IMG/VR virus record: IMGVR_UViG_3300050120_000230
Coordinates: 248,001 to 312,000 of that record
Length of the DNA: 64,000 bases
Direction: 5' to 3' (one strand)
This document shows, piece after piece, positions 20,754 to 49,621 of the stretch; position 1 is the first letter of the stretch, and every line of letters begins with the position of its first letter. The notes below the pieces were generated by a model. It made no database searches. It saw only the letters and a program-made list of their open reading frames with translations, and was not told the origin of the DNA. The position numbers and the translations under genes were made by a program.

Positions 20754-20963
20754 ATGGGACAAATGCTGATCTTCCCCGAGTGGGCTTTCAAGGTGTCGAA
20801 TGCCGAGATGCTCATCATGCTCAAGGCGCTCGGTGGCCGCCTTCGAAATGACGACGAGATCGCCGAAGCGAAGGAACTGGGTGACAAGCTCACTCGCAGT
20901 CGCATCTCTGAGTTGGAGCATGTGACCACCCACCTCAAGAAGTCGATGGAGGAAAGTAGTTGA
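20754..20963 (+). CDS. Hypothetical protein
   Basis: SD AAGGAG upstream. Confidence 0.6.
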   Translation: MGQMLIFPEWAFKVSNAEMLIMLKALGGRLRNDDEIAEAKELGDKLTRSRISELEHVTTHLKKSMEESS

Positions 20964-20989
20964 CGAGAGCTAAACTCTCGGACTAAATA
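20960..20989 (+). promoter_or_regulatory. Hybrid promoter TTGACG-N17-CTAAATA with inverted repeat CGAGAG-ctaaa-CTCTCG in the spacer
   Basis: Directly visible; predicted TSS at or near ATG 20995. Confidence 0.6.
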
Positions 20990-20994
20990 GGAGG

Positions 20995-21036
20995 ATGAGA
21001 ATGACGGTCACCACGCGAACAACGACCACCGGCTGA
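20995..21036 (+). CDS. Thr-rich leader peptide MRMTVTTRTTTTG (putative attenuator uORF)
   Basis: 7 of 13 codons are Thr; stop codon inside a hairpin; 34 nt upstream of tRNA-Thr genes. Confidence 0.7.
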   Translation: MRMTVTTRTTTTG

Positions 21037-21070
21037 GCCCCTGCAAGGGTTTCAGTCGTAGAGGTTGCGC

Positions 21071-21153
21071 GCCACGGTGGCTCAGCGGCGACAGCGCGTC
21101 ATTCGTAATGACGAATACAAACACCGGGGGTTCGAGTCCCTCCCGTGGCACCA
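21071..21153 (+). tRNA. tRNA-Thr(CGT), enlarged variable loop, encoded CCA
   Basis: Acceptor GCCACGG/CCGTGGC; anticodon stem CGTCA/TGACG, loop TT-CGT-AA; T-loop TTCGAGT. Confidence 0.85.
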
Positions 21154-21171
21154 ACCTCTCATCCTCCATAT

Positions 21172-21335
21172 GCCGGTTTAGCTCAGTTGGTAGAGCAGTG
21201 GTTTTGTTTCCGTGGCGGGTAATAGCCTCGGGTCGAGCGATCTTCGGATCGCTCCCTTTGAAGGACAGAGAGCCTAAAGCTCACAAGTCCAAGGAAAACC
21301 GAAGGTCGCGGGTTCGAGTCCTGCAACCGGCACCA
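21172..21335 (+). tRNA. tRNA-Thr(TGT) interrupted by an 88-nt insert (21208-21295) directly after the anticodon
   Basis: Exons GCCGGTT...GTGGTTT-TGT and AA-ACCGA-AGGTC-GCGGG-TTCGAGT-CCTGC-AACCGGC-ACCA rebuild a canonical tRNA. Confidence 0.8.
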
Positions 21336-21541
21336 TTTTACCAGCTTTCGCCAGCAGCAATATCTTGTCGTGCAGATCGAAATGCAAAAAAACGTGGATA
21401 AATAATACCTGAAAGTCCCCACCCAAAGATGGACAAGACTCTTCAGGGAACATGATGGGGCCTATGACAGTCCTATTTAGTTTGTTCCCACACGCCAGTC
21501 ATGGCCAAACCCCAACAAACCAAAATTAAGGAACACACATT

Positions 21542-39768: not shown

Positions 39769-39804
39769 CTTCTGTCATTTGGTTGACTAAATCTAAATTA
39801 CTCT

Positions 39805-39897
39805 CTGAGTGGCCGCGCGGCGCGAAGGGAGCCTAAAGAACACGGCGCCGCTGGTTCCGGCCGGGTTGGATTCCCGGTGATCCGGCGGCGTCGTCAC
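39805..39897 (+). ncRNA. GC-rich structured element of unknown class upstream of valS
   Basis: Stems CGGCGC/GCGCCG and CCGGG-TTGGATT-CCCGG within a longer CGCTGG/CCGGCG helix. Confidence 0.35.
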
Positions 39898-39940
39898 TAA
39901 ATACGCACTTAATCGCCATACCGTAGGAGGATAGGCAAAT

Positions 39941-41422
39941 GTGGGACGTAAGCAGCTAACGAAGACCTTCGATCATCGCACCGAAGAGTCCTCGATCTAT
40001 CAGAATTGGGAGACTAGCGGTGCGTTCGCCCCTCGCGGCGACGGTCCTGCTTATTTTCTCCCAATGCCACCGCCGAATATCACCGGCATCTTGCACATGG
40101 GGCACGCACTTTTCGCGACCCTGCAAGACATCTCGACCCGCTATCATCGCATGAAAGGGGACGCCACGTTGTGGCTGCCGGGAAGCGACCATGCGGGCCT
40201 CGCAACGCAAGACAAGCTCGATGCTCTCATGATCGAGCAAGGGCTCGACCCTAACGGTCCAGAGTTCGATGCGTTCGCGGAAACCTACAAGCTCAGCCTG
40301 CAAGGCACGATCATGAAACAGCTTCGAAGCTGTGGTGCATCGTGTGATTGGTCCCGCGAGACGTTCACGCTCGACGACCGCTACTCCAACGCCGTCCAGA
40401 CGGCTTGGAAAAAGTGCAACGACGCTGGCCTGACCTACGCCAAGGAAGGTGAACTCTTCATCAACATGGAGCCATTGGCCAAGCGTCTGCTTGACCATCT
40501 CGATGCTGGTGATCTGAAGATCATTCCGGCCGGTGGAGAAGGAACTCTGCGGAACTTCCTGACCAAGATCGAGCCATGGAACATCAGTCGTAAAATCCGC
40601 TGGGGTCACAAAATCCCCGGATGGTTCCACGACGGGCACAACATGGTCTTCGATACATGGTTCTCGTCGGCACTCTGGCCGTTCGCCACGCTTGGTTGGC
40701 CAGACGACACCGAAGACATGCAGCGATTCTACCCGGCGGCCATGATCGAAACGGCTGACGACATTCTGTTCTTCTGGTGTGCGCGGATGCTCATGATGGG
40801 CCTCCTGCTCACCGACCGTCTGCCGTTCGACACGATCTTCCTGCACGGTTTGATCCGTGACAAGCACGGAAAGAAGATGTCGAAATCGGCTGGCAACGGC
40901 ATCGACCCACTCGACATCATCGAACGTTACGGCGCCGACAGTATGCGGTTTGCCTTGGCCGAAGCTGCCACGCCCGGTCAAGACATGAGGATGTGGGACG
41001 ACAAGTTCCAAGCAGGCAAAGCTCTGCGGACGAAACTGTGGAACGCCGCTCGATATTCCTTGGCCCATTACGAACGCCTAGGAAGCCCGCAGGAGCCCTT
41101 TAAGCCCTCGAAGCACTACGACGACGTTGAGATGGAAAAGAGGCTCACAGCGGCTCACAGGGACGCTACAGAGGCATTTGAAGAGCTACGTTACCACGAG
41201 GCTGCTCATGGGATCAGAAAGTTCATCTTCGAAGACTTGTGTGGCTGGTATATCGAGGCCACGAAGAGCCGTCTATACGACGAAGATGACCAAGATGCTC
41301 TTCAAACCCTGATGTGGGCTCTGGATGGCACGTTGAAGATGCTTCATCCGATCATGCCGTTCATCACTGAGCGCATTCGTGAGGCATATTCGGGCACGCC
41401 GCTCATCACAGATGCGTGGTAG
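39941..41422 (+). CDS. valS: Minimal valyl-tRNA synthetase (no CP1 editing domain, no C-terminal coiled coil)
   Basis: PPPNITGILHMGH, GSDHAGLATQ, WNISR..RWGH.IP, VFDTWFSSALWPF, KMSKS, YG.D..RF, LHP.MPFITE. Confidence 0.95.
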   Translation: MGRKQLTKTFDHRTEESSIYQNWETSGAFAPRGDGPAYFLPMPPPNITGILHMGHALFATLQDISTRYHRMKGDATLWLPGSDHAGLATQDKLDALMIEQGLDPNGPEFDAFAETYKLSLQGTIMKQLRSCGASCDWSRETFTLDDRYSNAVQTAWKKCNDAGLTYAKEGELFINMEPLAKRLLDHLDAGDLKIIPAGGEGTLRNFLTKIEPWNISRKIRWGHKIPGWFHDGHNMVFDTWFSSALWPFATLGWPDDTEDMQRFYPAAMIETADDILFFWCARMLMMGLLLTDRLPFDTIFLHGLIRDKHGKKMSKSAGNGIDPLDIIERYGADSMRFALAEAATPGQDMRMWDDKFQAGKALRTKLWNAARYSLAHYERLGSPQEPFKPSKHYDDVEMEKRLTAAHRDATEAFEELRYHEAAHGIRKFIFEDLCGWYIEATKSRLYDEDDQDALQTLMWALDGTLKMLHPIMPFITERIREAYSGTPLITDAW

Positions 41423-45827: not shown

Positions 45828-46285
45828 CGGTCAAGGACTTGTCTAATCTTCTCGATACGCTGGTCGTCGATGACACGCGCTCGATCATTCTCGTTCCAAA
45901 GCAAACGCCGAATCACCTAGACTCAGCGCACTCCATCCCACCGGAATATTTGTGGATGATTCCGTTGTCGGCGGCTGGACACTACATCATCCACGACCAC
46001 GCCAAAGAACCAGAGGGCATACAAGCATTTGAGCATTGTAGGTCACCGATCATTCAATACGATTTGTATGATGACCGTAGCTTCAGCTACCAGCGCACTC
46101 GTCTCCACGACATGGGCATGACACAGTGGTGCGAAGAAACCCTTCGCGGCCACTACATCGTGCGTAAGAACTATGAGGCGGTTTTGCCGCCGCCGAGCGT
46201 CAAAACGATCATCGAAGTCTGGTTCGATGACCCAGTGGACGCCGTGGTTTTCAAGATGCGATGGAAGGGCAACCCATGCGAATAG
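45821..46285 (+). CDS. DAxxFK[LM]xW-family protein
   Basis: WCEE...DAVVFKMRWK. Confidence 0.7.
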   Translation: MVTVKDLSNLLDTLVVDDTRSIILVPKQTPNHLDSAHSIPPEYLWMIPLSAAGHYIIHDHAKEPEGIQAFEHCRSPIIQYDLYDDRSFSYQRTRLHDMGMTQWCEETLRGHYIVRKNYEAVLPPPSVKTIIEVWFDDPVDAVVFKMRWKGNPCE

Positions 46286-46578
46286 AGGATCGCCCGAACA
46301 TCGCTCTTTCGCATCTTGACCTTCAAGATGGCAGGCACGAGGACATCAGCGATCTGCCTATCGTCGTCGTGCCGTTGAAAAACGTCTGTATTTCTGGTGG
46401 CAGCCTTGCATTGGCGCCCGAGACTAGGCATTGGCTAATTGCCAACGTCGGCCACCAATATCGTGGCGAGCAGATTTCGTGCTGGGATTATATCCTCGCA
46501 GAGAGCGCCACCGGGCTCGCGACGTTTCGGTTCAAAGACGTAACGCACGCCACCTTGTTCAAAATGTTCTTCTCATGA
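46276..46578 (+). CDS. DAxxFK[LM]xW-family protein
   Basis: HATLFKMFFS. Confidence 0.7.
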   Translation: MRIEDRPNIALSHLDLQDGRHEDISDLPIVVVPLKNVCISGGSLALAPETRHWLIANVGHQYRGEQISCWDYILAESATGLATFRFKDVTHATLFKMFFS

Positions 46579-46832
46579 GTTCCGATCTGGATCGCGTGGC
46601 CGAATTGAACACGTTGATGAAGATGTTCGGCATCGACGGGAAAGTCATGTTTTTCCCAAAAAACTCGCTGCCCTTTCATCTCCAAGGGATTTTTCACGGC
46701 GTGCATCAGGGAACCTCACGTAACTCGGTGGCCGAGATCGAACAGTTCGTGCAAGACCTCATCAACGAGGACAAGGCGCCGGGCTTGGGCGTGCAACTGC
46801 AAACGACCATCGCCAAGCGTGCTGCGAAATGA
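46575..46832 (+). CDS. ELNxLxKMF-family protein 1
   Basis: RVAELNTLMKMFG. Confidence 0.7.
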   Translation: MSSDLDRVAELNTLMKMFGIDGKVMFFPKNSLPFHLQGIFHGVHQGTSRNSVAEIEQFVQDLINEDKAPGLGVQLQTTIAKRAAK

Positions 46833-47074
46833 TCCGCGATGATTATTACCGCGATGTGTGCCCGCGCATTGGTAAGCTCAACGTGCTCCTTAAGCTCTAC
46901 GATCTTGGGGAGATCACGGTTGGGATGACGGCCGACTATCGCCAGCAATTCACTCATCGAATTGGGGCACCCGAGCACGAGAATTACACGGTGCGCTGGA
47001 CGCTGGATTCCATCGAACACCACGTCAATCTGCTGATCGGCATAAAACAGCGAAGGATTGCAAGTGGCGAGTAG
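46829..47074 (+). CDS. ELNxLxKMF-family protein 2
   Basis: RIGKLNVLLKLYD. Confidence 0.7.
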   Translation: MIRDDYYRDVCPRIGKLNVLLKLYDLGEITVGMTADYRQQFTHRIGAPEHENYTVRWTLDSIEHHVNLLIGIKQRRIASGE

Positions 47075-47408
47075 CGAACTCGGCGCGGCGCTCGAACGTC
47101 TTGGTGTTGAGCCGAAAGCGCATCTCGGTGGTTATCGCACGACGCTTGAGCGGTTCGACCACATCAACACGCTCTTCAAAATGTTCGGCATAAAGGCCGA
47201 AGCCGGTATCCGCGCGCCAATGCCGTTTGACGACTATCGATATTTCAACATCATCGTCGAGATCACAACGGTGCACGACAGTGGCACGCAGATCACCCGC
47301 ATGGGCTATCCCTTCAAGACGACCAATGAGCTTGCGGCCTTCGCCGACACTCTGATCCGGCGCGCTCAGGGCCTAGAACCAGAAATCGAAGAGTGGCGCC
47401 ATGCGTGA
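47064..47408 (+). CDS. ELNxLxKMF-family protein 3
   Basis: RFDHINTLFKMFG. Confidence 0.7.
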   Translation: MASSELGAALERLGVEPKAHLGGYRTTLERFDHINTLFKMFGIKAEAGIRAPMPFDDYRYFNIIVEITTVHDSGTQITRMGYPFKTTNELAAFADTLIRRAQGLEPEIEEWRHA

Positions 47409-47595
47409 TGATCGCATGGACGAATTGAACACCCTATTGAAGACGTTCGATACGGGTCTAAGCGTCGAGCCGTTTTCAGGCGGGTATCCGCCGACCAGCT
47501 ATGCCCTGCTCGAAGACAAGTTGATCGTCTTCATCGGCGCTTTTGAGGCAGTCGAGAAAATGGGGCACAGCCGAATGACAGAGCAAAACCAGTGA
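47401..47595 (+). CDS. ELNxLxKMF-family protein 4
   Basis: RMDELNTLLKTFD. Confidence 0.7.
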   Translation: MRDDRMDELNTLLKTFDTGLSVEPFSGGYPPTSYALLEDKLIVFIGAFEAVEKMGHSRMTEQNQ

Positions 47596-47891
47596 AGCGG
47601 ATGTCGATCACCGAGCGGGATGCCGAGATCAAGGCGCTCAACGTTCTTTTCAAGATGTTCGACATCCACGCCGTGGCTCATTACGACGAGGGTAAACCGA
47701 ACAGCAATGCCGGATGCTGGCGGCCGTATCCCTTTCGGATAGGGACCTTCGAGACGACCGAAGGGACTGGTGCTCGTGCCGGATCGTTGCGCGAAAAGAT
47801 GACAACGAAATACATGTTCTATTCGCTGCAAGAACTCATCAAACAGGTCCATATCATGGTCAGCGAACATCAAACGAAAGAAGTCGCGTGA
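47592..47891 (+). CDS. ELNxLxKMF-family protein 5
   Basis: EIKALNVLFKMFD. Confidence 0.7.
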   Translation: MKRMSITERDAEIKALNVLFKMFDIHAVAHYDEGKPNSNAGCWRPYPFRIGTFETTEGTGARAGSLREKMTTKYMFYSLQELIKQVHIMVSEHQTKEVA

Positions 47892-48175
47892 CCTGTCCAA
47901 TTCGTTCGGCAAAAGCGAAAGAAGCGTGGGCGAGGCGGCGGCAGAGAAACGACCGCTGCGACGAGTTGAACACGCTGCTGAAGATGTTCGACCTGAACTT
48001 CGTGACCGGCTATGCCGACCGTGAGCGGCGAATGTCGAAACAGGAGTTCAACGACTATCGCTATCGGCTATATGGCATGGGTCCGGCCATTTCGATGGAA
48101 TACTTCCACACGCTCGAAGACCTCACACGGCGAGTGAACGTGCTTATCGGAGAGGTGTCCGGTGTCCGAGTTTGA
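47888..48175 (+). CDS. ELNxLxKMF-family protein 6
   Basis: RCDELNTLLKMFD. Confidence 0.7.
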   Translation: MTCPIRSAKAKEAWARRRQRNDRCDELNTLLKMFDLNFVTGYADRERRMSKQEFNDYRYRLYGMGPAISMEYFHTLEDLTRRVNVLIGEVSGVRV

Positions 48176-48575
48176 ACACGAGCTTGCGAAGCTGCAAACA
48201 GTCTTTGATACACGAGCACACGAACTCGAAGAGCTTGGGAAACTGCAAGTCACTTTGAAGATGGCTGGCAAGGCGGGCGATGTCGCCCATTACAAATATG
48301 GGCCGGGCTTCGTCTTCCGATGCTGGTGGCAAACAGGCAGCGGTGGCAGGGGATTCGAAGAAGACGAGTATTTCGAGGAACTAGATGAACTGAAGAAGCG
48401 CGTTCACGCTATCGCCACCGGTCACATCGCGGCGAGGGCCGACCCGAAAACAAATTCCATCGACGAGACGGCTATTGAGCCGCTTTTTGTCTCAAGTTCA
48501 CGCTGGGCGCCTTTCGCCGAACTGAACATCCAACGCGCAATGCAGAAGCACAAACGTGACAACGGAGGAATATAA
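48162..48575 (+). CDS. ELNxLxKMF-family protein 7 (divergent)
   Basis: LGKLQVTLKMAG. Confidence 0.6.
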   Translation: MSEFEHELAKLQTVFDTRAHELEELGKLQVTLKMAGKAGDVAHYKYGPGFVFRCWWQTGSGGRGFEEDEYFEELDELKKRVHAIATGHIAARADPKTNSIDETAIEPLFVSSSRWAPFAELNIQRAMQKHKRDNGGI

Positions 48576-48807
48576 AATCTGGGCCGCCGTGACCCATGAC
48601 CGCGTCGAGGGATTGCGCGTCTTGGTGAAGTTGTTCGGCGGCAAACTGCACTTAGGATTCCACGACGTTTGGGTCACGCCTAACGGCCCGGTGTGGCGAC
48701 AGTTCTTTTCCGCTGTCGGAACAAACCTCACTACTTTCGACACTTTCGAAGAGCTTGAGACTCACGTCAAAACGACCCTCGCTGAAAAACTTGATGTCGT
48801 TGACTAA
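48556..48807 (+). CDS. ELNxLxKMF-family protein 8 (divergent)
   Basis: RVEGLRVLVKLFG. Confidence 0.6.
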   Translation: MTTEEYKIWAAVTHDRVEGLRVLVKLFGGKLHLGFHDVWVTPNGPVWRQFFSAVGTNLTTFDTFEELETHVKTTLAEKLDVVD

Positions 48808-48843
48808 ATAAATGTTGACGGGCCGATTCCGGTCCTTCATAAA
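48804..48843 (+). promoter_or_regulatory. Late motif CTAAATA (48804) plus TTGACG (48815)-N17-CATAAA promoter with a spacer hairpin
   Basis: Directly visible upstream of the leader ORF and tRNA cluster. Confidence 0.5.
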
Positions 48844-48852
48844 GAACATACT

Positions 48853-48984
48853 ATGACAAACGCACGCACCATTTTCGGAACCGCCAACGCGCCCCTCGGG
48901 CGCGATTGCGGCGATATGGGCGGTCGGGGCGAACGAGAACTTCGCGCCGGGATGGTTCGTCATGGTGTTCTGACCAGCTTCTAA
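48853..48984 (+). CDS. 43-aa Gly/Asp/Glu-enriched leader peptide (putative attenuator uORF)
   Basis: MTNARTIFGTANAPLGRDCGDMGGRGERELRAGMVRHGVLTSF; absent from ORF track. Confidence 0.55.
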   Translation: MTNARTIFGTANAPLGRDCGDMGGRGERELRAGMVRHGVLTSF

Positions 48985-49015
48985 AAGCAGTCACTCCCCC
49001 AAAAATCGAAACCGT

Positions 49016-49047
49016 TCCGGCGACCAGTGGAAATCCCACTGGCCGGA
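49016..49047 (+). promoter_or_regulatory. Strong hairpin between the leader ORF and the first tRNA
   Basis: TCCGG-cga-CCAGTGG-aaatc-CCACTGG-CCGGA; no poly-T tail. Confidence 0.6.
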
Positions 49048-49072
49048 CGATTGTCCAACTTCAAATGACAAT

Positions 49073-49148
49073 GGAGCGGTAGCTCAGTGGTAGCAGCGCC
49101 GGTTTGTCAGGCCGAAGGTCGCGGGTTCGATCCCCGTCCGCTTCGCCA
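49073..49148 (+). tRNA. tRNA-Asp(GTC), encoded CCA
   Basis: GGAGCGG/CCGCTTC; loop TT-GTC-AG. Confidence 0.9.
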
Positions 49149-49173
49149 TTTCATTTGAAGCTAGGTGATTTGA

Positions 49174-49245
49174 GCGGCTGTAGCTCAGTGGTAGAGCATC
49201 TCGTTGCCAACGAGAATGTCGCGGGTTCGAATCCCGCCAGCCGCT
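49174..49245 (+). tRNA. tRNA-Gly(GCC), no encoded CCA, flanked by a 13-bp inverted repeat
   Basis: GCGGCTG/CAGCCGC, U73; TCTCG-TTGCCAA-CGAGA. Confidence 0.9.
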
Positions 49246-49281
49246 CAAATCACCTAGAAGGCAATCCTCCGAGACCTTTAC

Positions 49282-49355
49282 GGAGCGTTCGACTATGGGT
49301 AAGTCATCACCCTTTCAAGGTGAGGTAGCGGGTTCGAGCCCCGCACGCTCTACCA
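49282..49355 (+). tRNA. tRNA-Glu(TTC), encoded CCA
   Basis: TCACC-CTTTCAA-GGTGA. Confidence 0.9.
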
Positions 49356-49357
49356 AT

Positions 49358-49431
49358 GGACCGTTCGTCTATGGGTAGGACACCACGTTCTCAGCGTGGG
49401 GGAAGGGGTTCAAGCCCCCTACGGTCTACCA
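49358..49431 (+). tRNA. tRNA-Glu(CTC), encoded CCA
   Basis: CCACG-TTCTCAG-CGTGG. Confidence 0.9.
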
Positions 49432-49468
49432 ATCTCAGCTTCGGTTGAGACGATCTTTGAAACTATAT

Positions 49469-49540
49469 GCGGGCGTAACTCAGCGGTAGAGTGTCAGCCT
49501 TCCAAGCTGTTCGTCGCAGGTTCGATCCCTGTCGCCCGCT
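49469..49540 (+). tRNA. tRNA-Gly(TCC), no encoded CCA
   Basis: GCGGGCG/CGCCCGC, U73; TCAGC-CTTCCAA-GCTGT. Confidence 0.9.
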
Positions 49541-49549
49541 CACTTTCAT

Positions 49550-49621
49550 GCAATCTTCGTCTATCGGCTAAGACGCCTTGCTTTCCGGCAGGAAAGAGCA
49601 GTTCGATTCTGCTAGGTTGCT
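49550..49621 (+). tRNA. Atypical tRNA-Gly-like gene with non-canonical (6- or 8-nt) anticodon loop
   Basis: GCAATCT/AGGTTGC plus U73; T arm AGCAG-TTCGATT-CTGCT; CTTGC-TTTCCG-GCAGG. Confidence 0.6.

What the first reader, a model, noticed from the sequence alone, without database searches (positions are those of the whole stretch)
48815..49148. Gly/Asp/Glu-rich leader ORF and competing hairpin ahead of the Asp-Gly-Glu-Glu-Gly tRNA cluster
Seen: the 43-codon ORF 48853-48984 has 8 Gly, 2 Asp and 2 Glu. Nine of the 14 residues in GRDCGDMGGRGERE are exactly the amino acids of the downstream tRNAs. Its 3' end (TGACCAG, 48971) duplicates the 5' arm of the downstream hairpin (CGACCAG, 49021), so either can pair with CTGGCC (49039). 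That is the mutually exclusive geometry of an attenuator. Inference: a multi-amino-acid sensor paralleling the Thr leader. Caveat: Gly codons are common in GC-rich sequence.
Basis: partly seen in the sequence, partly recalled or inferred. Interest (0 to 1): 0.82.

Follow-up and report, generated by a model that had tools for sequence, protein, structure and literature searches.

The report
Translated leader before phage tRNA cluster
A huge soil phage and at least eight related lineages carry a conserved, apparently translated 40-48-codon reading frame and two conserved RNA hairpins just ahead of their Asp-Gly-Glu tRNA genes; this looks like a ribosome-operated switch for tRNA production, a use of leader peptides I found no report of.

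Summary
The ORF, its residue counts, the heptamer duplicate and the hairpin are all present as described. On the window alone the composition is weak: Gly P=0.017, G+D+E P=0.18, and Asp+Glu are not enriched.

Relatives change the picture. Nine distinct lineages of huge phages carry the same module directly before a tRNA-Asp-led cluster:
- a sigma-70-type promoter, usually 9 nt before the ATG;
- a 40-48-codon ORF with core GRDGGDMGGRGGERELRAG;
- a long hairpin (LR) with the stop codon at its tip;
- a second hairpin (T).

The ORF looks translated. Frame 0 is open in 9/9 lineages, core pN/pS is 0.36 against about 1.6 in shifted frames, and indels are in-frame. LR, T and an ORF-internal hairpin show compensatory changes.

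The main caveat is that T has a U-tract in only two lineages, not in this window.

Best reading (confidence 0.45): a ribosome-dependent attenuator-like leader for tRNA genes. Main rival: a co-transcribed microprotein gene.

The parts
48805..48810 (+). Conserved A/T motif TAAATA, 3-6 nt upstream of the -35 hexamer (UP-element-like or a regulator site).
   Evidence: Present in all 12 relatives' loci whose upstream DNA is held. The 12-mer GTTGACTAAATA occurs exactly once in the window.
48815..48820 (+). -35 hexamer TTGACG.
   Evidence: TTGAC[G/A/T] is conserved with a 17-nt spacer in all lineages with held upstream DNA.
48838..48843 (+). -10 hexamer CATAAA. The predicted transcription start is the invariant A at 48850, giving a 3-nt 5' UTR.
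   Evidence: the -10-like hexamer lies 9 nt before the ATG in 10 of 12 loci, 6 nt in L024 and 41 nt in L025/26. Column 1 (A) is invariant in alignment A2. The start site is inferred, not measured.
48853..48984 (+). 43-codon leader ORF (MTNARTIFGT...LTSF), probably translated in near-leaderless mode.
   Evidence: Homologues of 40-48 aa. Frame 0 is open in 9/9 lineages. Core pN/pS is 0.36 against 1.66 and 1.53 in shifted frames. Codon-position entropy in the core is 6.6/7.0/16.1. The antisense shadow frame shows no purifying selection.
48898..48939 (+). Conserved G/D/E(+R)-rich core, codons 16-29 (GRDCGDMGGRGERE).
   Evidence: The family consensus is GRDGGDMGGRGGERELRAG. Gly and Glu codons vary only at third positions. 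In the folding model a ribosome held on these codons leaves the LR helix intact.
48888..48904 (+). Hairpin H1 inside the ORF (CGCGCCC-CUC-GGGCGCG), the core of a longer 5' domain at about 48861-48926.
   Evidence: RNAalifold columns 39-45/49-55; 4 of 7 pairs show two-sided changes. The 5' domain as a whole is not more stable than shuffles.
48945..49022 (+). Long irregular hairpin LR. The 5' arm is ORF codons 31-43, the 3' arm is the 3' UTR up to CCGGCG, and the stop codon (48982-48984) lies in the apical loop.
   Evidence: dG -31.8 kcal/mol, z -4.4 here; -28 to -42 and z -3.7 to -6.2 in 9 lineages, with the stop codon at the tip in all. Base helix compensatory changes: L012 CGCUGGG/CCCAGCG, L029 CGCCGAGA/UCUCGGCG.
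48971..48977 (+). It lies in the upper part of LR and is probably incidental.
   Evidence: Conserved only in L021. In the predicted fold it pairs within LR.
49013..49049 (+). Hairpin T. The upper stem is 49024-49030 / 49036-49042. The optional lower stem CCGGC (49017-49021) / GCCGG (49042-49046) competes with the LR base GCCGG (48946-48950). No U-tract follows.
   Evidence: In the upper stem, 5 of 7 pairs show two-sided changes. A U-tract is present only in the L016/17/29/30 and L025/26 lineages.
49045..49056 (+). Small hairpin GGAC-GAUU-GUCC just before tRNA-Asp. Its 5' arm overlaps the 3' strand of T's lower stem.
   Evidence: Equivalent hairpins in L012 (UGGAU/AUCCA), L014 and L028.
49073..49621 (+). 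tRNA cluster Asp(GTC), Gly(GCC), Glu(TTC), Glu(CTC), Gly(TCC), plus a sixth tRNA-like gene with a 6-nt anticodon loop.
   Evidence: ARAGORN and Rfam tRNA hits. The same cluster type follows the leader in L008, L012, L014, L016/17, L021, L024-L027, L029 and L030.

Best explanation
This is the cis-acting leader of a phage tRNA operon, and it appears to work as a ribosome-operated RNA switch.

Proposed mechanism:
1. A sigma-70-type promoter (TTGACG, 17 nt, CATAAA) starts transcription about 3 nt before an ATG. The 43-codon ORF is then translated in near-leaderless mode, which looks normal for this phage.
2. The last third of the ORF is the 5' arm of a long hairpin (LR). Its 3' arm ends in CCGGCG, directly 5' of a second hairpin (T). 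The stop codon sits at the LR tip.
3. If no ribosome covers codons about 29-39, LR forms and T is reduced to its 7-bp upper stem.
4. A ribosome moving through codons 29-39, and probably one at the stop codon, melts the LR base. CCGGC is then free to extend T into a long stem.
5. A ribosome held up on the conserved Gly/Asp/Glu-rich codons 16-28 leaves LR intact.

Inferred output: extended T lowers passage into tRNA-Asp-Gly-Glu-Glu-Gly, by termination or altered processing, and LR favours it. Slow decoding of Gly, Asp or Glu codons would then raise synthesis of exactly those tRNAs.

Shown: conservation, the coding signature, the helices and their competition.

Inferred: the transcription start, actual translation, the effect of T on RNA polymerase or processing, and amino-acid specificity.
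For: 1. Family and linkage. Nine distinct lineages carry the promoter-ORF-LR-T module. In every locus with downstream DNA it lies 73-91 nt before a tRNA-Asp that heads an Asp/Gly/Glu cluster, although the flanking protein genes differ.

2. Translation.
- Frame 0 is open in 9/9 lineages. Frame +1 has stops in 9/9 and frame +2 in 7/9.
- Core pN/pS is 0.36 against 1.66 and 1.53 in shifted frames.
- Third-position entropy is 2.4 times that of positions 1 and 2.
- Indels are multiples of 3.
- Gene callers called the sense ORF in 8 contigs.
- Only 7 of 24 long ORFs in this phage have a Shine-Dalgarno-like motif, and several genes have a promoter 6-9 nt before the ATG.

3. Structure.
- 95.8% of alignment cells are paired.
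- 11 of 26 pairs show two-sided changes, against a mean of 4.3 and a maximum of 9 in 500 shuffles, and 2-6 with slid partners.
- LR has z -3.7 to -6.2, with the stop codon at its tip in all 9 lineages.

4. Switch logic.
- Constrained folding of the window: P-site at codons 1-27 gives LR base 0.8-1.0 and T lower stem about 0. Codons 29-39 give LR 0 and T lower stem 0.8.
- In L016, whose T is a canonical terminator with U7, no ribosome gives terminator 0.84. A stall at codons 20-28 (GDMGGRGGE) gives antiterminator 0.9-1.0. Codons 29-45 give terminator 1.0.

5. Selection. Against L021 the ORF is 98.5% and the 3' leader 96.6% identical, compared with 87% for tRNA-Asp, 83-84% for the other tRNAs and 63% for the upstream gene.

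6. Parallel case. The second tRNA locus of the window has a leaderless-type 13-codon ORF with 7 Thr before tRNA-Thr(CGT). Seven Thr in the 11 codons from the second ATG gives P=3e-7, and none of 505 tiny ORFs is so biased.

7. Some substitutions in the core stay inside the G/D/E set: L014 has G to E and G to D.
Against: - In this window, and in 7 of 9 lineages, T has no U-tract, so classical intrinsic termination is not the conserved output.
- The lower stem of T is lineage-specific: strong in window/L021, L016 and L025, weak or absent in L012, L024 and L028.
- Asp+Glu are not enriched by count, P=0.84.
- Arg is conserved at 4 core positions with no tRNA-Arg in the cluster.
- Many conserved codons also lie in conserved helices, so peptide, codon and RNA constraints cannot be fully separated.
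- L029 keeps the Gly-rich leader, but only Asp and Glu tRNAs were found after it.
- The 5' domain is not more stable than shuffles.
- There is no expression or end-mapping data. The only RNA-library evidence is two low-depth contigs of relatives.
- The folding model is at equilibrium and ignores ribosome bulk and kinetics.
Confidence: 0.45

Rival explanations
1. The ORF is an ordinary microprotein gene. Its 19-residue Gly/Arg-rich core is the functional part. It merely shares a promoter with the tRNAs, and LR and T stabilise or define the 3' end of the small mRNA after RNase P cuts at tRNA-Asp.
For: Purifying selection at the amino-acid level in the core, including non-G/D/E residues: R, M, L and A, and an E-R-E stretch predicted unpaired that varies only at third positions. 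T lacks a U-tract in most lineages. Short contigs in RNA-labelled runs cover the leader up to T and stop there. From my own knowledge, small protein genes co-transcribed with tRNAs are known (tpr in the E. coli tyrT operon, tufB after thrU).
Against: The N- and C-terminal thirds of the peptide are free to vary, including radical changes. No protein family or homologue exists outside this context. The linkage to tRNA-Asp at 73-91 nt is invariable in a gene-shuffling background. A stop codon placed exactly at the hairpin tip in 9/9 lineages, and the overlap of LR with T's lower stem, are not needed for a stabiliser. The Thr-rich ORF before tRNA-Thr points to codon content rather than peptide function.
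Confidence: 0.3
2. The region is a structured non-coding 5' leader of the pre-tRNA transcript, serving for example as a processing or folding scaffold or an RNase III/E substrate. The open frame is incidental to G+C-rich helices.
For: There is abundant helix covariation. Several four-fold-degenerate sites are invariant across lineages, for example GGC GGT CGC and CGC GCC GGG. The tRNAs themselves sit in extended leader-trailer helices. The in-register antisense frame is also open in 9/9 lineages, which shows how easily frames stay open here.
Against: Only sense frame 0 is both open and under purifying selection: pN/pS 0.36 against 1.1-1.8 for all other open or shifted frames. The ATG lies 6-9 nt from the -10 hexamer in all lineages but L025/26. 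Indels are in-frame. Variation in a predicted loop (GAR CGA GAR YTY) falls on third positions only. The stop codon tracks the hairpin tip although C-terminal lengths differ.
Confidence: 0.1
3. One reading: TGACCAG (48971) and CGACCAG (49021) compete for CTGGCC (49039) as antiterminator against terminator.
For: The three motifs are present in the window and in the closest relative L021.
Against: No ACCAG copy occurs at the ORF end in L008, L012, L014, L016, L024, L025, L027 or L028. In all folds 48971-48977 pairs inside LR. The hairpin is not a U-tract terminator here.
Confidence: 0.03
4. The ORF is a chance open frame in G+C-rich intergenic DNA with no function.
For: On the window alone the G+D+E content is not significant, P=0.18.
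Against: The ORF is conserved in nine distinct lineages with a coding signature and covarying structure. It is also the best-conserved segment of the locus.
Confidence: 0.01

Closest known systems
Leader-peptide transcription attenuators of enterobacterial amino-acid operons and of pheST (trpL, hisL, thrL, pheL, pheM); my own knowledge of the textbook systems.
   Same: A short translated ORF in the 5' leader, a cluster of codons cognate to the regulated product, ribosome position choosing between mutually exclusive helices, and a stop codon near a hairpin tip. In the L016 and L025 lineages a GC-rich stem plus U-tract terminator overlaps the alternative helix.
   Different: The controlled genes are tRNAs, not biosynthetic enzymes or synthetases. 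Three amino acids would be read at once. The ORF is near-leaderless. In the window and most lineages the terminal hairpin has no U-tract. There is no sequence relation to Rfam leader families.
Leaderless polycysteine short ORFs that act as Cys-responsive attenuators in mycobacteria (Canestrari et al., Mol Microbiol 2020; recalled, not checked here).
   Same: A leaderless small ORF whose codon content matches the downstream function and which acts in cis on operon expression.
   Different: Those control cysteine-metabolism protein genes in a cellular genome. Here the target is a phage tRNA cluster and the RNA structure is far more elaborate.
T-box riboswitches.
   Same: The functional logic is similar: the decoding or charging status of a specific tRNA feeds back on genes of the same aminoacylation pathway through terminator/antiterminator choice.
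   Different: T-boxes bind uncharged tRNA directly and need no translation. No T-box or specifier-loop match was found (Rfam). The targets here are the tRNAs themselves.
Small protein genes co-transcribed with tRNAs (E. coli tyrT-tpr, thrU-tufB; my own knowledge).
   Same: A protein-coding frame shares a transcript with tRNA genes.
   Different: Those frames lie downstream of the tRNAs and are not embedded in a covarying switch-like structure next to the first tRNA.

Membership tests
Leader-peptide transcription attenuator (trp/his/thr type) | Short ORF in the 5' leader that is translated. | tested here: met
   This is a comparative coding signature only: frame 0 is open in 9/9 lineages, core pN/pS is 0.36 against about 1.6 in shifted frames, and indels are in-frame. 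Translation itself was not observed.
Leader-peptide transcription attenuator (trp/his/thr type) | Run or cluster of codons for the amino acid(s) of the regulated pathway. | tested here: inconclusive
   9 of 14 core residues are G, D or E, rising to 11 of 15 in most relatives, and they are conserved. However, Gly has only P=0.017, D+E are not enriched, and Arg is equally conserved.
Leader-peptide transcription attenuator (trp/his/thr type) | Mutually exclusive antiterminator and terminator pairings selected by ribosome position. | tested here: met
   In the window, CCGGC (49017-49021) pairs with GCCGG at 48946-48950 or at 49042-49046. Constrained folding switches at codons 28-29. The same holds in L016. 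The competition is weak or absent in L012, L024 and L028.
Leader-peptide transcription attenuator (trp/his/thr type) | Intrinsic terminator (GC-rich stem followed by a U-tract) before the regulated genes. | tested here: not met
   The window has no U-run after T, and the scan did not call it. The feature is met only in the L016/17/29/30 and L025/26 lineages.
Leader-peptide transcription attenuator (trp/his/thr type) | Read-through responds to the supply of the cognate charged tRNA. | not testable with these tools
   This needs in vitro or in vivo assays.
Rfam leader / riboswitch families (Thr_leader, His_leader, T-box and others) | Match to the family covariance model. | tested here: not met
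   No hit in 48815-49072, even at E up to 10. None at gathering score in the window or in 6 relatives.
Known protein or phage protein families (Pfam, PHROGs) | Profile match of the peptide. | tested here: not met
   No PHROG match. No Pfam match at E up to 10 for 6 family members. None in one genome for each of 185,579 species.
Sigma-70-type promoter with leaderless or near-leaderless mRNA | -35 and -10 hexamers at 17-nt spacing, with the start codon at or within a few nt of the predicted start site. | tested here: met
   TTGACG, 17 nt, CATAAA, then 9 nt to the ATG. The spacing is conserved in 10 of 12 loci. Other genes of the phage show the same layout. The start site is not mapped.

The most novel reading that the evidence does not exclude
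Huge phages regulate their own tRNA genes with leaderless leader peptides whose codon content matches the tRNAs that follow. Here a Gly/Asp/Glu-rich frame precedes tRNA-Asp/Gly/Glu, and a 13-codon frame with 7 Thr precedes tRNA-Thr in the same genome. A shortage of decoding capacity for those codons would switch the leader RNA and raise output of exactly those tRNAs. That would be leader-peptide attenuation applied to tRNA supply and reading several amino acids at once.
Probability: 0.35. Interest if true: 0.85.

Novelty: new variant of a known kind. Interest (0 to 1): 0.7.

Why it matters
- Phage tRNA genes are usually treated as constitutive cargo for codon compensation or for escaping tRNA-targeting defences. 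A conserved ribosome-sensing leader before them would mean the phage measures decoding capacity and tunes its tRNA supply.
- My three full-text literature searches found no report of leader-peptide control of tRNA genes.
- The module is small, about 260 nt, and has clear testable parts: the ATG, the codon cluster, the LR base and T. Natural variants exist with and without a U-tract.
- If the rival holds instead, the result is still useful. It would define a new microprotein family and a covarying RNA structure specific to huge soil and freshwater phages.

Tried and rejected
- blastn of the locus against GenBank phages gave only tRNA matches.
- IMG/VR scans with the tRNA-Asp 3' half, the flanking proteins and the synthetase returned only the source contig or non-syntenic DNA.
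- Relatives were reached instead through homologues of the downstream phosphatase-like gene and of the peptide itself, and through one pattern scan of metagenomes. That scan also gave four chance coding matches, L018-L020 and L022.
- The scan of 185,579 reference genomes found nothing.
- A scan for relatives of the tRNA-Thr locus hit only chance coding matches, so conservation of the Thr leader could not be tested.
- Rfam, Pfam and PHROGs gave nothing for the leader or the peptide.
- I first took the missing Shine-Dalgarno as evidence against translation. I rejected that because only 7 of 24 long ORFs have such a motif and several genes are leaderless-type.
- Antisense ORFs 48652-48963 and 48851-49039 were rejected as shadow frames, with pN/pS 1.1-1.3.
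- A 1:2-type pairing of the H1 3' arm with CGCGCC is not conserved (by eye on the sequences).
- Pairing of the 5' end (AUGAC...) with GUC(A/G)U at codons 36-38 is seen in most lineages but absent in L012. I did not rely on it.
- No run is shown to hold this phage's RNA. Laying four RNA-labelled runs gave only low-depth contigs of relatives.

Full report
**Context.** The window is part of IMGVR_UViG_3300050120_000230, a 415 kb phage contig. A peat metagenome run holds it fully. It encodes a T4 gp15-like tail sheath stabiliser and two class I aminoacyl-tRNA synthetase genes. G+C is about 55%. The window has seven tRNA genes: tRNA-Thr(CGT) at 21071, and a cluster at 49073-49621 of Asp(GTC), Gly(GCC), Glu(TTC), Glu(CTC), Gly(TCC) and an odd sixth gene.

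Taken alone the composition is only mildly unusual:
- Gly P=0.017.
- G+D+E P=0.18.
- D+E P=0.84.
- 0.6% of 321 comparable small ORFs reach the same local density.

The hairpin has no U-run and was not called as terminator-like. No Rfam family matches the leader. No Pfam or PHROG family matches the peptide.

**Relatives.** GenBank phages and IMG/VR gave almost nothing. Homologues of the downstream phosphatase-like gene led to metagenome contigs. L008, L012, L014 and L016/L017 carry an Asp-Gly-Glu tRNA cluster preceded by a clearly homologous leader.

A conserved 22-mer found a close relative, L021 (the same contig as L023). A profile of six peptides then found P0013-P0026, and these led to L024-L030.

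In total there are nine distinct lineages with DNA: window/L021, L008, L012, L014, L016/17/29/30, L024, L025/26, L027 and L028. Wherever downstream DNA is held, the ORF stops 73-91 nt before a tRNA-Asp that heads an Asp/Gly/Glu cluster. The neighbouring protein genes differ. Nothing similar was found in one genome for each of 185,579 bacterial and archaeal species.

**Promoter and start.** All loci with held upstream DNA show the same layout: TAAATA, 3-6 nt, TTGAC[G/A/T], 17 nt, a -10-like hexamer (CATAAA, CATATT, TATAAA, TAGATT and others), then the ATG. The -10-to-ATG distance is 9 nt in 10 of 12 loci, 6 nt in L024 and 41 nt in L025/26.

The A three bases before the ATG is invariant and is the expected start site. 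This is an inference. The lack of a Shine-Dalgarno sequence is not an argument against translation here. Only 7 of 24 long ORFs have one, and at least four other genes have the same promoter type 6-8 nt before their ATG.

**Is it translated?**
- Sense frame 0 has no internal stop in 9/9 lineages. Frame +1 has stops in 9/9 and frame +2 in 7/9.
- In the conserved core the summed column entropy is 6.6, 7.0 and 16.1 for codon positions 1, 2 and 3.
- Core pN/pS is 0.36, against 1.66 and 1.53 in the shifted frames.
- Length differences are whole codons.
- The in-register antisense frame is also open, but its pN/pS is 1.1-1.3, so it is a shadow frame.
- Gly codons at three positions use three or four of the GGN codons, and both Glu positions use GAA and GAG.

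I conclude the frame is very probably translated. The evidence is comparative, not experimental.

**RNA structure.** RNAalifold on 11 leaders predicts four helices: H1 inside the ORF, H2 (no covariation), the base of a long-range helix LR, and hairpin T.

Overall, 95.8% of cells are paired. 11 of 26 pairs have two-sided changes, against a mean of 4.3 and a maximum of 9 in 500 column shuffles, and 2-6 with slid partners.

Folding each lineage separately shows that LR is a 67-81 nt irregular hairpin. It runs from codon 31 or so to the CCGGCG just 5' of T, with dG -28 to -42 kcal/mol and z -3.7 to -6.2. The stop codon lies in or at the apical loop in all nine lineages, although the apical sequences and C-terminal lengths differ.

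Clear compensatory events in the LR base are CGCUGGG/CCCAGCG in L012 and CGCCGAGA/UCUCGGCG in L029/30. The 5' domain (H0/H1) is not more stable than shuffles, although H1 covaries.

**Competition.** In the window the strand CCGGC (49017-49021) can pair with GCCGG inside the ORF (48946-48950, the R-A-G codons), which forms the LR base. It can also pair with GCCGG just after T (49042-49046), which extends T from 7 to about 14 bp.

Partition-function folding with a 27-nt stretch kept unpaired, standing in for a ribosome at each codon, gives:
- P-site at codons 1-27: LR base 0.8-1.0, T extension about 0.
- Codons 29-39: LR 0, T extension 0.8.

In L016, where T is a textbook terminator (lower stem GGCG/CGCU with a bulged A, then U7), the result is:
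- No ribosome: terminator 0.84.
- Stall at codons 20-28 (GDMGGRGGE): LR 0.9-1.0.
- Codons 29-45: terminator 1.0.

This is the logic of a classical attenuator, and the permissive stall window coincides with the conserved G/D/E-rich codons.

**What does not fit.**
- T is followed by a U-tract only in the L016 group and in L025/26. The window and six other lineages have none. The lower stem of T is also lineage-specific. The conserved output may therefore not be intrinsic termination. Processing, 3'-end formation, or terminators of an unfamiliar host are alternatives.
- Arg is conserved at four core positions with no tRNA-Arg nearby. Three of these lie in conserved sequence: the H1 and LR helices and the invariant GGUCGC.
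- The E-R-E-L stretch lies in a predicted loop and varies only at third positions. This fits either codon sensing or peptide function.
- L029 has the same leader, but only Asp and Glu tRNAs were detected after it.

**Further support.**
- Against the close relative L021, the ORF (98.5%) and the 3' leader (96.6%) are the best-conserved parts of the locus. They exceed tRNA-Asp (87%), the other tRNAs (83-84%), the promoter (77%) and the upstream gene (63%).
- The window's other tRNA locus has TTGACG (20960), a -10-like CTAAAT, 6 nt, then ATG AGA ATG and a frame reading MRMTVTTRTTTTG (20995-21036), 34 nt before tRNA-Thr(CGT). Seven Thr in the 11 codons from the second ATG gives P=3e-7, and none of 505 tiny ORFs in the window is so biased. 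I could not find relatives of that locus.

**RNA data.** No run is shown to hold this phage's RNA. Four RNA-labelled runs that share a few words were laid on the locus.
- One (X7, labelled 'RNA?') has a 203-nt contig of a relative. It aligns from 48850 to 49031 and runs 14 nt further.
- A rhizosphere metatranscriptome (X8) has a 151-nt contig over 48900-49051.
- Neither contig bridges into tRNA-Asp.
- A third run (X9, probably DNA) has a contig that extends 53 nt upstream of 48850.

Depth is 2-4 and these are contigs, which show presence and not absence. This is compatible with a discrete leader RNA ending at T but proves nothing.

**Verdict.** The finding marks a real, conserved and previously undescribed element. 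The best-supported reading is a translated, ribosome-sensitive leader that acts in cis on the tRNA cluster (confidence 0.45). Gly/Asp/Glu-specific sensing is its most interesting but unproven form (0.35). The main rival is a co-transcribed microprotein gene with a structured 3' end (0.30). Three literature searches found no precedent for leader-peptide control of tRNA genes.

Noticed in passing
window 20960-21153: A second tRNA locus with the same design. TTGACG and a -10-like CTAAAT lie 6 nt before the ATG at 20995. The 13-codon frame MRMTVTTRTTTTG has 7 Thr, 3 of them ACG, which is read by the downstream anticodon CGT. tRNA-Thr(CGT) follows. The stop codon lies in the 5' arm of a hairpin, and the fold is not more stable than shuffles. 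There is no Rfam Thr_leader match.
   Followed up: partly
window 21172-21336: There are tRNA-like 5' and 3' halves: an acceptor and D arm at the start, and a T arm, acceptor and CCA at the end. An insert of about 90 nt separates them. Neither ARAGORN nor Rfam calls it. It may be an interrupted or intron-bearing tRNA.
   Followed up: partly
window 49550-49621; also L021 5103-5175: The sixth gene of the cluster scores as tRNA (34 bits), but ARAGORN finds a 6-nt anticodon loop with a two-base 'anticodon' tc. The closest relative keeps it. In L008 an ordinary tRNA-Gly(TCC) sits at that position.
   Followed up: no
window 49060-49068 / 49151-49159; 49161-49173 / 49245-49257; 21058-21065 / 21152-21159: Leader and trailer of individual tRNAs are complementary and extend the acceptor stem: by 9 bp for Asp, 13 bp for Gly(GCC) and 8 bp for Thr. 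This suggests processing from long double-stranded stems (read).
   Followed up: no
window 46261-48807: A tandem array of about eight small same-strand genes (64-137 aa) shares an N-terminal motif like ELNTLLKMFD. It ends just before the leader promoter. Similar arrays of small genes lie next to the cluster in L006 and L008.
   Followed up: no
window 39782-39940: GTTGACTAAATC is a one-mismatch copy of the motif upstream of the leader promoter. A G+C-rich stretch follows, with a T-arm-like hairpin (CCGGG TTGGATT CCCGG), just before the synthetase gene at 39941. There is no Rfam hit.
   Followed up: partly
window 42874, 57421, 60428 (+) and 12132 (-): Other genes have TTGAC-16/18-TAnnnT promoters only 6-8 nt before their ATG, and only 7 of 24 long ORFs have a Shine-Dalgarno-like motif. 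Leaderless expression seems common in this phage.
   Followed up: partly
L029 3136-3285 compared with L030 602-761: Two near-identical leaders are followed, right after the U-tract of T, by different tRNA-Asp genes and different clusters. The leader plus T seems to behave as a module with a recombination junction just after T.
   Followed up: no
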